NCBI RefSeq assembly: GCF_033153115.1
Contig: NW_026889752.1
Location: 2,604,001-2,668,000, forward strand
Direction of reading: 5' to 3'
DNA from: Saccostrea echinata
Lineage: Eukaryota
Length of the DNA stretch: 64,000 nucleotides
Part shown: positions 11,968 to 14,160 of the stretch, one piece after another
How the letters are laid out: the number at the start of each line of letters is the position of its first letter
How positions within the stretch are numbered: position 1 is the stretch's first letter
Notes under the pieces: generated by a model
Told to the model about the DNA's origin: nothing
What the model saw: only the letters and a program-made list of their open reading frames with translations
The model's database searches: none
Translations under genes and position numbers: made by a program

Positions 11968-12226
11968 TAAAAGTTAGTAAAGCCTCACTTGCTGGTCAAT
12001 TACAATGTAATCAACCATATCATTTACTGACATATCTCAGTCAGAGACAGTTAACAAATTATCGCTTTCTTGCATATTTATTTACACAAACAACTTTCAT
12101 CTGTGTTTATTATTTAAACATTACGTGACCTTGGGAAATTCCCTTACCGGTTCTACTATTTAAAAAGAACACACCGGTATATAATAAAACAAATAAAATG
12201 AATATACAATATTGATATATATAAGT

Positions 12227-12336
12227 GGATTCCTGATGATGGCGGACTTATATAACTAATTATAATTAGTATAGAATATCTATTTATTGCTTGGCCTGTT
12301 ATCACACCGCCGAAACACTAAATTAGTGTCGGATCT
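12227..12336 (+). ncRNA. Type I hammerhead ribozyme (copy B, 3' pLTR), predicted cleavage after 12330
   Basis: Identical to 9857-9966 at an offset of 2370. Confidence 0.88.
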
Positions 12337-12383
12337 AAGTGAAAACGGGGTTCGTGGCTTGATGGGAGTCACTTTTTTACTAC

Positions 12384-12500
12384 GTGGCAAGCATGAGAGG
12401 CCTAATGAATGAAATGAGTCTATTGGACTTATCTGTTTGTTAAAGATATGTACCAGAGACAGGTTATCAATGAAAAGTATGATTTTATTTTATTTTATTT

Positions 12501-12535
<35 letters not shown>

Positions 12536-14160
12536 AATGTATTTCCCCAAATCAAAAAAAAAAAATACTATTGGCACCAATTCAAAAAAGTGATTTTTTT
12601 TTAATTGGGGTATTAATCCAAGTAGTAGGCCATGGCAAAACATGACACTGAAAGTAGCACTCACAACCCTGTTTTGTTGACCCTGCACTGTCTGTAAAAA
12701 GCTGCAAAGTATTTGGAGTACTCCATTCACAATCAGGAAAATAAACCATACCATTGAATTTATGTAGAAAATCTAGCCATAAAAGCATATCCTTGCGCAA
12801 TTGACTAGCTATCTAGATGTGGTGTGGTTTTTGCAAAGAAAAATAATAAATAAATAAATAAACAAATAAAATAATTTTCCTATGAGAATTTGCAAATTTT
12901 TAAGCTTTATTTTGTTTTGTGACGCCAAATATTGTTAAGTAGCTATGAGGTCACCAACCTTTGAAGTGGTATACTAACCTGCATTTTAACAGTGTCGATG
13001 CCTACACCCAAGAAGATTAACACGTAGTAGGTACCTCTGTTTTGTCTCTATTCAAGGGCACTCCAATTTAAGCATGCATCTTGAAAAGACTTCGTAAGCT
13101 GATTGTAGTTGGGAGTTTTAGCCTTCCCCGCAAATAAAAATCATCAAAATAGTGATGAACAATTACTAAAACAGATTTATAACGCGTTAGCCACTCTTAG
13201 AATGTTGAGAAGGTCTCAAATATTTGAAAAGATGTGTAATATCCAAAGGGTAAGCATTTGTCTATGTAATATCCCCCCTTAAAATATATCCCCAATAGCT
13301 CAAAATTCCCAGGACATTGGAATTAGACGGAAAGCGTTCTTTACATCAACTTTAACAAAAATAGTCCCTTTCTCAACAGGCTTATCATTTGGACTACCGA
13401 GTCAAAGGATATGTAATTCATTAATGTTAAACTGGGTAAATAATAAATGCAGAAAGCCTGTGGGTAAGATAAATGCATTATCATTCTCGAACCACCATCA
13501 GCTTTTGGAACCAAACCATTGAAGGGGATACATGTAAACTGTGCAGAGGTGGCTGTAATAATGGATTACTCATGCAATCTTCCTCTACCTCTTTGTTCGG
13601 ATTCTCTTGTACAATATCCTCATGTTCATATGCCGACACTAAGTTGTTTGAGAATACAGAGTTCCAAGACCAAAAATCCTGCAACTTGAAAAACTTTTTT
13701 TAAGACTAATTGTTAGAAAATTAAACAAGCTGCTACTCTACCTGGATAAATTTATAAGTATTCTGAAATAAACTTAATATTTATTAATAAATTTCACATG
13801 GCCCACAACTCTTGGCTGAGTGCGATTTTGCTTTGGGATGTAGGTTTGTTGTTTGTAAATTGGGGGTCAGGTTTTTGATTCACATATAAGAGAAATACCT
13901 CACTGTCAACCACACCCCAGTCTAGTGAGGAATATAGTGCCATTTTTTAGCCGAAATCGCTCAACATAAGCAATCCATCCTTGTGACATTTCTACCCCTA
14001 AACTTACATCATGCATATTCTTCAGCATTTGATGATTTTTTGGCAGGGTGAGCTGTTGTGTATATGCTTAAAAGTATCAAAAATGCATCTGATCACCTTT
14101 CTATAGTCGTTAATTTGTTCTACTGTTTTTGTTGGGCTACAATTAAACCTTGTGCATTCT
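12384..14160 (-). mobile_element. Decayed DIRS/Ngaro-type retrotransposon, 5' half (gag-like, RT, RNase H N-terminus)
   Basis: Minus strand: SDAFLI..SIYTTAHP (gag-like), HLSYP, KVDVKNAFRLIP, DKCLPFG, HYFDDF (RT), DMLLWLDFLHKFNG..LQLFTDSAGS, FELVPIV, IDNLSLVHI and IRPLMLAT (RNase H). Heavily frameshifted. Confidence 0.85.

What the first reader, a model, noticed from the sequence alone, without database searches (positions are those of the whole stretch)
12331..12383. Three 3' termini end at the same base, 53 nt past the ribozyme cleavage site, and both arms exceed unit length
Seen: termini at 6509, 9589 and 12383 all stop at ...gtcacttttttactac with no poly(A) tail. The two hammerhead cut sites in an arm are exactly one unit (2370 nt) apart. 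Arms are about 1.30 and 1.15 units long and read through the cut site. The 53 nt can form an aagtga/tcactt stem just before the end. Inference: the ribozymes excise a unit-length RNA that circularises, and RT initiates at a fixed internal structured site and runs more than once around, which would generate the pLTR.
Basis: partly seen in the sequence, partly recalled or inferred. Interest (0 to 1): 0.8.

Follow-up and report, generated by a model that had tools for sequence, protein, structure and literature searches.

The report
Fixed cDNA start of Penelope-like element

Summary
The literal observation holds. Three termini (6509, 9589, 12383) end in ...GTCACTTTTTTACTAC with no poly(A). This is 53 nt past a plausible hammerhead cut site, and the cut sites in each arm lie 2370 nt apart.

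The "unit" is wrong, though. Elsewhere in this genome the family's unit is 3655 nt (ORF1 plus an RT, no endonuclease). The 2370-nt period is family positions 1286-3655 joined directly to TACTAC, and that junction occurs only twice in 923 Mb, once in each arm of this window.

Genome-wide, 3' ends fall in a roughly 6-nt window around TACTAC. They often carry A, AT or ATG, the bases that follow TACTAC in tandem copies, so the start site is internal to the RNA. At least nine non-canonical head-to-tail junctions restart at the same site, and about a dozen loci have two arms with 3' ends pointing outward.

This is the published Penelope-like element (PLE) architecture: pseudo-LTR (pLTR), inverted partner and tail. 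Internal initiation was shown in vitro in 2024, and the ribozyme-circle model was proposed in 2014.

My reading is that both ends of a break prime reverse transcription at a fixed site, and cDNA ends re-prime there. A circle is neither needed nor excluded. The same scan also noted this insertion under other titles.

The parts
6509..8878 (-). Outer copy of the minus arm. It is a 5'-truncated copy (family positions 1286-3655) whose 3' end TACTAC abuts the left host flank at 6509.
   Evidence: BLAST to a natural full-length unit, 99.6% over 2370 nt. Flank read.
8879..9587 (-). Second pass of the minus arm (family positions 2947-3655, 709 nt). Its TACTAC is joined directly to position 1286 of the outer copy.
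   Evidence: The junction TACTAC|CATTTTCAC is found only at window 8866-8889 and 10003-10026 in the whole genome.
9589..9655 (-). Third, abortive pass: a 67-nt 3'-terminal fragment (family positions 3589-3655). It starts 14 nt upstream of the cut site and is followed (sense orientation) by A(TG).
9656..9661 (.). A 6-nt filler (agtcct) at the joint between the two arms.
   Evidence: Read. It lies between the BLAST segments.
9662..10013 (+). Second pass of the plus arm (family positions 3304-3655, 352 nt), ending in TACTAC at 10013.
   Evidence: It shares the private C at 9802 with 12172.
10014..12383 (+). Outer copy of the plus arm (family positions 1286-3655). Its 3' end TACTAC abuts the right host flank at 12383.
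10039..11967 (+). Intact 642-aa reverse transcriptase ORF with no endonuclease domain. Its twin lies at 6925-8853 on the minus strand, with one residue different (L/P).
   Evidence: Pfam RVT_1 is weak. Homologues of about 645 aa occur in bivalves.
12226..12337 (+). Hammerhead ribozyme motif, type I.
- Helix I: 12226-12232 paired with 12331-12337.
- Core: CUGAUGA 12233-12239, bulged U at 12240, GAAA 12312-12315.
- Helix II: 12241-12245 paired with 12307-12311, with a 61-nt loop.
- Helix III: 12315-12329.
- C17 at 12330, predicted cut 12330/12331.

Copies lie at 9856-9967 (+), and on the minus strand at 6555-6666 and 8925-9036.
   Evidence: Hand-built fold of -21.3 kcal/mol against an MFE of -22.7. 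Genomic variants fall only in loops and at C17 (C or A). Rfam gives no hit.
12331..12383 (+). The 53-nt tail between the cut site and the cDNA start. Predicted features are a hairpin GUGGCUU-GAUGG-GAGUCAC (12354-12372) followed by 11 unpaired nt, UUUUUUACUAC (12373-12383).
   Evidence: The ends cluster here genome-wide.

Best explanation
This is an ordinary, very recent insertion of an endonuclease-less Penelope-like element (PLE). It was built by reverse transcription that always begins at one internal place on the element's RNA, at or just after ...UUUUUUACUAC, 53 nt downstream of the hammerhead cut site.

Shown by sequence:
- The two 3'-OH ends of one chromosomal break each carry a copy whose 3' end faces outward. 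This gives a minus arm on the left and a plus arm on the right.
- Within each arm, synthesis restarted at the same site, giving head-to-tail partial copies (pLTRs). In the minus arm it restarted a second time, giving a 67-nt stub.
- The arms are joined in the middle by a 6-nt filler.

Inferred:
- The RT picks its start by recognising the RNA, not by pairing with the primer. Any DNA 3' end, including the end of a cDNA just made, can therefore prime there.
- The RNA extends past the start site into AUG..., so it comes from a more-than-unit template.
- The templates were not cut at the hammerhead site when copied.

The 2370-nt period is a one-off: a restart junction between the start site and position 1286. 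Both arms carry it but differ at two bases, so they came from two RNAs of a lineage that already had this junction or this 5' end. The source of that lineage is unresolved.
For: - **Architecture.** BLAST to a natural 3655-nt unit resolves the window into five segments, each ending at position 3655.
- **Same layout elsewhere.** About a dozen other loci show the same layout: 3' ends outward, one to eight passes per arm, and 38-78-nt stubs at inner ends.
- **Fixed ends.** There are 59 exact copies of the 16-mer genome-wide. Twelve sit at canonical junctions and the rest at ends or restart junctions. End offsets run from -2 to +4 with a mode at +1.
- **Internal start.** A follows TACTAC at 19 of 25 host-flank ends (p = 2e-5).
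- **Restarts.** Restart junctions to positions 82, 652, 907, 1286, 2088, 2949, 3126, 3401 and 3434 use the same offsets as the host-flank ends.
- **No target-site duplication** is visible at any of the 12 two-armed loci examined.
- **No endonuclease** is detected in ORF1, ORF2, the 3' UTR or the longer homologues.
- **Two templates.** The plus arm has C at both 9802 and 12172, while the minus arm has T at 9090 and 6720. Each arm's passes therefore share a template and the arms differ.
- **Literature.** A lizard PLE starts RT internally at a site not homologous to the target. It extends both DNA strands, and it still inserts with a dead hammerhead (PMC11167929). pLTRs, inverted 5'-truncated partners and tails are standard PLE features (PMC8557442).
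Against: - Re-priming on cDNA ends is inferred from junction anatomy only. No biochemical or RNA data exist for this element.
- The shared 1286 junction in two arms that differ by SNPs is not explained by random template switching. It needs an unseen parent with that junction, or reuse of unusual RNAs.
- No pass ends at family position 1 next to host DNA or the other arm. Canonical junctions therefore look like read-through of a longer-than-unit template, which a circle could also supply.
- PLE membership of the RT was not tested against named PLE references.
- The source of the broken DNA ends is unknown: a spontaneous break, or an endonuclease supplied in trans.
Confidence: 0.6

Rival explanations
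1. First reader's model, which is also the 2014 proposal of Cervera and de la Pena. Hammerheads cut a multimeric transcript into unit-length RNA, the RNA is ligated into a circle, and the RT starts at the fixed site and runs more than once around, producing the pLTR.
For: - Arms and arrays longer than one local period, up to 7.6 units on C33.
- Every copy reads through the cut site.
- Canonical junctions look like continuous templates, since no pass ends at position 1.
- Both passes of the plus arm carry the same private C.
- A near-MFE hammerhead is present, and the motif is conserved in relatives.
- The model is published as a hypothesis (PMC4209133).
Against: - The 2370-nt period is bounded at the RT start site, not at the cut site. 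It is unique to this locus, so a hammerhead circle of that size presupposes the tandem it is meant to explain.
- At least nine junctions from the start site to scattered internal positions cannot come from a circle.
- The C33 units are mosaics of polymorphisms shared with other loci.
- The 67-nt stub is followed by A(TG), not C.
- Three of five stubs exceed 53 nt, so they cross the cut site.
- In vitro, a PLE inserts from RNA with a dead hammerhead, and no reads end at the cut site (PMC11167929).
Confidence: 0.12
2. Plain read-through with no re-priming at this locus. A parent locus, missing from this assembly or lost, already carried tandem 2370-nt units. Its long transcripts were copied once from the fixed start site at each end of the break.
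For: - Both arms carry the same otherwise unique junction yet differ at two bases.
- Templates contain sequence beyond the start site.
- Tandem loci that could give multi-unit RNA exist.
- Frangieh et al. propose multi-copy mRNA as the template.
Against: - No second copy of the junction exists in 923 Mb.
- The parent junction itself still has to be made by a restart at the fixed site.
- The 67-nt stub, with its own TACTAC, still needs a restart.
- The stub's A(TG) suggests a template with the canonical 3' context.
Confidence: 0.2
3. Rearrangement after insertion. One arm was inserted, then an inverted duplication or arm-to-arm gene conversion produced the second arm and spread the junction.
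For: The arms are 99.93% identical (2 differences in 2370 nt) and share the unique junction.
Against: - The same two-armed layout recurs at about a dozen independent loci with unequal arms, so it arises during insertion.
- The host flanks are not inverted copies of each other.
- The arms have different inner ends, plus a stub and a filler.
- The C at both 9802 and 12172 would need an extra conversion step.
Confidence: 0.08

Closest known systems
Poseidon PLE of Anolis carolinensis (PAc), Frangieh et al. 2024, PMC11167929
   Same: RT starts at fixed sites inside the RNA, downstream of the hammerhead cut, without homology to the primer. Genomic copies end at those sites (the "tail"). Both DNA strands are extended. 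The hammerhead lies just upstream of the start.
   Different: PAc has a GIY-YIG endonuclease. Its start sites are about 85-92 nt past the cut and inside the ORF. Here no endonuclease is found, the start is 53 nt past the cut and upstream of ORF1, and there is no biochemistry.
Canonical PLE insertion architecture (Penelope, Neptune, Naiad and others), Craig et al. 2021, PMC8557442
   Same: Partial tandems forming pLTRs, an adjacent inverted 5'-truncated copy, a short terminal extension, a hammerhead in the pLTR, and no poly(A).
   Different: This family has ORF1 plus an RT of about 642 aa and no endonuclease, yet it sits inside chromosomes. Endonuclease-less PLEs are generally described at chromosome ends.
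Hammerhead-circle model for PLEs and retrozymes (Cervera and de la Pena 2014, PMC4209133; plant retrozymes 2016, PMC4918200)
   Same: A hammerhead in a repeated terminal region, and genomic copies longer than one unit.
   Different: Retrozymes are non-coding and their circles are documented. Here no circle is shown, and the restart junctions argue for discontinuous synthesis.
Bacterial DRT2 reverse transcriptase (PMC12039810) and telomerase
   Same: Repeated copying from a fixed template start, giving concatemeric cDNA from a linear RNA by programmed jumping. This is a working analogy only.
   Different: Those templates are tens of nucleotides long and the jump is precise at both ends. Here only the acceptor site is fixed, and the passes are 38 to 3655 nt long.
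L1 twin priming and endonuclease-independent L1 insertion at breaks (from my own knowledge, not checked here)
   Same: Two DNA 3' ends prime cDNA synthesis. The results are inverted, 5'-truncated structures with no target-site duplication.
   Different: In L1 twin priming the two parts form a 5' inversion within a single insertion, and priming uses the poly(A) or internal pairing rather than a fixed structured site.

Membership tests
Penelope-like elements (PLE) | Partial head-to-tail copies forming pseudo-LTRs | tested here: met
   Direct repeats at a spacing of 2370 nt. Multi-pass arms in the window and at other loci.
Penelope-like elements (PLE) | An inverted 5'-truncated copy adjacent to the upstream end | tested here: met
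   Inverted arms of 2722 nt. The same layout recurs at about a dozen loci.
Penelope-like elements (PLE) | A defined 3' end without poly(A), reflecting internal RT initiation (the "tail") | tested here: met
   Ends fall within -2 to +4 of TACTAC, and the next base is enriched for the templated A.
Penelope-like elements (PLE) | A hammerhead ribozyme motif in the pLTR | tested here: met
   All core nucleotides and three helices are present, and the fold lies within 1.4 kcal/mol of the MFE. The bulged base at helix II matches the PLE hammerheads described in PMC4209133. Rfam models do not score it, and cleavage is untested.
Penelope-like elements (PLE) | An RT of the PLE/telomerase-like clade | tested here: inconclusive
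   Pfam RVT_1 scores 25 bits, below its cut-off. The homologues are unnamed bivalve proteins. The PDB sequence search gave nothing relevant. No named PLE reference was available for comparison.
Penelope-like elements (PLE), canonical EN+ type | A GIY-YIG endonuclease fused to the RT | tested here: not met
   No GIY-YIG hit in the RT ORF, ORF1, the open frame after the stop codon or longer homologues. This is an endonuclease-less variant.
Hammerhead ribozyme (type I) | Core C3-U4-G5-A6-N7-G8-A9, G12-A13-A14, the A15.1-U16.1 pair and H17, with helices I to III | tested here: met
   Positions 12226-12337. Variants among 149 genomic matches fall in loops or change C17 to A.
Hammerhead ribozyme (type I) | Self-cleavage at the predicted site | not testable with these tools
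   Only assembled contigs of small runs were available, so RNA ends cannot be seen.
Retrozyme-like circular RNA | A covalently closed unit-length RNA | not testable with these tools
   A circle junction has the same sequence as the genomic tandem junction, and no raw reads were available.

The most novel reading that the evidence does not exclude
The RT of this endonuclease-less PLE works on a kilobase scale rather as its relative telomerase does on a short template. It stays bound to a 3' RNA element and repeatedly repositions any DNA 3' end (a broken chromosome end or its own nascent cDNA) at one fixed template start. This builds pLTRs and arrays by serial re-initiation, often on the same RNA molecule, without any circular RNA. 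The within-arm sharing of a private base (9802 and 12172) and the identical start offsets at host ends and restart junctions fit this reading.
Probability: 0.35. Interest if true: 0.6.

Novelty: new member of a known kind. Interest (0 to 1): 0.38.

Why it matters
How PLEs make their pseudo-LTRs and inverted pairs is still an open mechanistic question. Craig et al. 2021 call these "still undefined features" of the PLE transposition cycle.

This family is young (copies more than 99% alike) and lacks an endonuclease. It offers clean natural junctions that separate two ideas:
- The acceptor site is fixed to within a few bases, whether the primer is host DNA or a previous cDNA.
- The donor site is arbitrary.

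That pattern favours start-site recognition on the RNA plus re-priming over a ribozyme-made circle. It also gives a concrete RNA element (hairpin plus U6ACUAC) to test in vitro. For annotation, it shows that the local repeat period of one PLE locus must not be taken as the family unit.

Tried and rejected
- **Rfam.** Searched the region at E <= 1 and the whole window at gathering score. No hammerhead or any other family was found.
- **Endonuclease hunt.** Tested the 55-aa open frame after the RT stop as a decayed GIY-YIG (no), ORF1 containing "GIY" (no) and longer homologues (N-terminal extension only).
- **Position 1286 as a regular RNA 5' end.** Considered a subgenomic ORF2 mRNA, since 1286 lies 25 nt before the ATG. 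Rejected: all 22 other copies of that site continue upstream with family sequence.
- **Stubs as run-off at a hammerhead-cut 5' end.** Predicted length is 53 nt. Observed lengths are 38, 51-53, 62 (actually an internal deletion), 67 and 78. Only one fits, on contig C1.
- **Excess of short second passes as a sign of a promoter in the pLTR.** Dropped as indistinguishable from ordinary 5' truncation.
- **RNA evidence.** Only assembled contigs of small runs from related organisms were available, so nothing could be learned about ends, strands or circles.
- **Empty target site.** The left flank has no second full copy in the assembly, so target duplication or deletion could not be measured.
- **PDB sequence search** of the RT gave only spurious interferon-gamma hits.
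- **Covariation of the tail hairpin** could not be tested, because every held copy belongs to the same family.

Full report
**1. What is in the window**

- Window 6509-12383 holds one compound insertion.
- The 16-mer GTCACTTTTTTACTAC occurs five times against 0.1 expected.
- Repeat analysis gives two inverted arms, 6509-9230 and 9662-12383. They are 2722 nt long and about 100% complementary.
- Inside each arm are direct repeats at a spacing of exactly 2370 nt. A third, 67-68-nt copy of the 3' end lies at 9588-9655.
- Each arm carries an intact 642-aa ORF with a weak RVT_1 match and nothing else.
- None of the three ends has a poly(A) tail.

**2. The unit is 3655 nt, not 2370**

- The last 184 nt of the element occur at least 40 times in the 923-Mb assembly. 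Elsewhere the spacing between tandem copies is 3655 nt.
- A natural unit from contig C33 has a 232-aa ORF1 with no Pfam match, followed by the RT ORF. There is no endonuclease.
- The window's 2370 nt are positions 1286-3655 of that unit at 99.6% identity.
- In tandem copies TACTAC is followed by ATGTTACG... In the window it is followed by CATTTTCAC..., which is position 1286.
- That junction exists only twice in the genome, once in each arm of this window.
- All 22 other copies of the 1286 site continue upstream with family sequence.
- Each arm is therefore a 5'-truncated copy preceded by a shorter copy (709 or 352 nt) that ends at TACTAC. Neither arm reaches one true unit.
- It follows that "cut sites one unit apart" is only a consequence of this local duplication.

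**3. The hammerhead**

- Rfam reports nothing.
- By hand the motif is complete:
  - Helix I has 7 bp.
  - The core is CUGAUGA, followed by a bulged U.
  - Helix II has 5 bp closing a 61-nt loop.
  - GAAA follows, then a 6-bp helix III.
  - C17 is at 12330.
- This fold costs -21.3 kcal/mol against an MFE of -22.7.
- A bulged base at the 5' side of a long helix II is described as usual for PLE hammerheads (PMC4209133).
- Among 149 genomic matches to the 3' half, changes sit in the helix III loop or turn C17 into A, which is an allowed cleavage-site base.
- In 80 metagenomic loci encoding relatives of the RT (33-50% identity), my own descriptor found canonical type-I hammerheads in 14 loci on the sense strand. 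It found 1 on the antisense strand, 0 in reversed sequences and 0 in five shuffles.
- Those hammerheads lie between the RT ORF's end and the next ORF1.
- The ribozyme is credible as a motif. Cleavage is untested.

**4. The 3' end across the genome**

- There are 59 exact copies of the 16-mer: 12 at canonical tandem junctions (7 in one array), 5 in the window, and the rest at ends or other junctions.
- In the loci I could read, the point where similarity to the tandem continuation stops is distributed as follows:

| Offset from TACTAC | -2 | -1 | 0 | +1 | +2 | +3 | +4 |
|---|---|---|---|---|---|---|---|
| Number of ends | 2 | 3 | 8 | 14 | 6 | 4 | 2 |

- A follows TACTAC at 19 of 25 host-flank ends (p = 2e-5), and G follows AT at 4 of 7 (p = 0.015).
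- The RT therefore starts in a window of about 6 nt on RNA that continues ...UACUAC-AUG(U). The start is internal to the template.
- The window's three ends have offsets of 0 (12383), 0 or +1 (6509) and +1 to +3 (9589).

**5. Architecture of the family**

- About a dozen loci show a minus arm on the left and a plus arm on the right, with 3' ends outward and 5' ends meeting in the middle.
- I saw no target-site duplication at any of the 12 two-armed loci examined.
- Arms hold from one to eight passes, and every pass ends at 3655.
- Besides canonical junctions there are restarts from TACTAC (+0 to +3) to positions 82, 652, 907, 1286, 2088, 2949, 3126, 3401 and 3434, plus stubs of 38-78 nt at inner ends.
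- The acceptor offsets at these restarts match those at host-flank ends. This suggests the same initiation step, with a cDNA 3' end taking the place of host DNA as primer.
- No pass stops at position 1 next to host DNA or the other arm. Canonical junctions therefore look like read-through of templates longer than one unit.

**6. Templates of the window's arms**

- The two 2370-nt copies differ at two sites. At 11129 the plus arm has T and the minus arm has C. At 12172 the plus arm has C and the minus arm has T.
- The plus arm's short pass also has C, at 9802. The minus arm's short pass has T, at 9090.
- Other family copies have T at both positions.
- Each arm's two passes therefore share a template, and the arms used different templates. 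This agrees with the scan's note s1-810172.
- Both arms nevertheless share the otherwise unique 1286 junction and a variant at family position 3263 also found in three units of the C33 array (u2-u4).
- Random switching at the same base in both arms has a chance of roughly 1 in 3655. The two RNAs therefore came from a lineage that already had this junction or this 5' end. I could not identify the source.

**7. Testing the circle model**

- Points in favour:
  - Copies read through the cut site.
  - Canonical junctions are continuous.
  - A private base is shared within one arm.
- Points against:
  - The local period is bounded by the RT start site, not by the cut site.
  - Restarts to arbitrary positions cannot come from a circle.
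  - The seven full units of the C33 array carry different combinations of polymorphisms shared with other loci. Unit 2 has the window's haplotype while its neighbours do not. They are therefore not rounds on one circle, although later recombination could blur this.
  - At locus c3b (contig C3, about 11.22 Mb) all passes are identical, which is uninformative.
  - The 67-nt stub is followed by A(TG), not by the C that a 2370-nt circle would template.
- Published work shows a PLE that inserts in vitro from RNA with an inactivated hammerhead. That study found no reads ending at the cut site (PMC11167929).

**8. RNA data**

- Only assembled contigs of small runs from related organisms were on offer.
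- Laid on 9500-12600, they show related families. Some share 12300-12330 and diverge after the cut site, and one contig ends an element at TACTAC followed by ATGT....
- These contigs cannot show RNA ends or circles.
- A circle junction would in any case be identical in sequence to the genomic tandem junction.

**9. The structured site**

- The 53 nt fold into two hairpins. The second is GUGGCUU-GAUGG-GAGUCAC at 12354-12372, followed by 11 unpaired nt, UUUUUUACUAC.
- This fold takes 83% of the ensemble, with z = -2.1.
- With upstream sequence included, the 5' strand of helix I can instead pair with GGGAGUCACUU.
- All held copies are near-identical, so no covariation test was possible.

**10. 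Comparison with what is known**

- pLTRs, inverted 5'-truncated partners and a short terminal extension are standard PLE features (PMC8557442).
- Internal, homology-independent initiation just downstream of the hammerhead, with extension of both strands, was shown for an Anolis PLE (PMC11167929).
- The idea that hammerhead-made circles template more-than-unit cDNA was proposed in 2014 (PMC4209133).
- Particular to this element:
  - It has no endonuclease although it sits inside chromosomes.
  - RT-only homologues of about 645 aa occur in oysters, pearl oysters and mussels, so the host is probably a bivalve.
  - The start site lies 53 nt past the cut.
  - The set of restart junctions is unusually clean.
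- In one related family a hammerhead is followed after about 7 nt by a 5'-truncated copy. The cut-to-start distance therefore seems to be family-specific.

**11. Verdict and limits**

- The inference of a fixed internal start is right and already known.
- The circle inference is a published hypothesis that this locus does not support.
- My best reading is two-ended priming at a break plus re-priming at the fixed site (confidence 0.6).
A natural copy served as the reference.

Noticed in passing
L033-L036 (G000:C33:6603525-6633078): This is the largest locus of the family. It has seven full 3655-nt units plus a 2187-nt partial on the minus strand, facing a plus arm of 221 + 1575 nt. The units are mosaics of polymorphisms shared with other loci (unit 2 has the window's haplotype). 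This points to several templates or to later recombination.
   Followed up: partly
L034:7264-7959 (-): Full-length units encode a 232-aa ORF1 with a helical, lysine/glycine-rich C-terminus and no Pfam match. The window's copies lack it entirely but keep an intact RT ORF.
   Followed up: partly
window 10039-11967 and proteins P0003-P0120: RT-only homologues of about 640-650 aa (38-61% identity) are common in Saccostrea, Pinctada and Mytilus and in host-associated metagenomes. The endonuclease-less state therefore looks old and conserved, not a recent loss. Longer homologues (835-870 aa) have N-terminal extensions, not an endonuclease.
   Followed up: partly
window 12223-12233 versus 12331-12341 and 12364-12374: The 5' strand of hammerhead helix I (AAGUGGAUUCC) can pair either with the sequence just after the cut (active ribozyme) or with GGGAGUCACUU next to the cDNA start site (MFE of the 169-nt region). 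This is a possible switch between ribozyme folding and the start-site fold. It was not tested.
   Followed up: no
L048 (G000:C1:7045641-7045731, minus strand): After a full-length pass, the next piece runs from TACTAC back to within 0-2 nt of the hammerhead cut site. A new restart (AT plus one extra T) follows. This is the only junction consistent with run-off on a ribozyme-cut RNA.
   Followed up: partly
G000, about 20 sites such as C5:4119441, C12:4353351 and C9:30954527: Copies of the hammerhead 3' half with GUA instead of GUC at the cleavage site probably represent a sister family.
   Followed up: no
L113:16-154: In a related metagenomic family, a hammerhead plus about 7 nt is joined to a 5'-truncated RT copy. 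This suggests a much shorter distance from cut site to cDNA start in that family.
   Followed up: partly
window 12470-12570: About 90 nt right of the insertion lies a (TTTTA)n repeat followed by a T-run of some 40 nt and an A-run. Several other family ends abut (TA)n, (CT)n or (CA)n microsatellites (loci L052, c3b).
   Followed up: no
L003 and L046 (G000:C46:9831549-9832736 and 9848704-9849992): One copy appears split into family positions 2468-3655 and 1181-2469 by about 16 kb of other sequence, presumably a later insertion or rearrangement.
   Followed up: no
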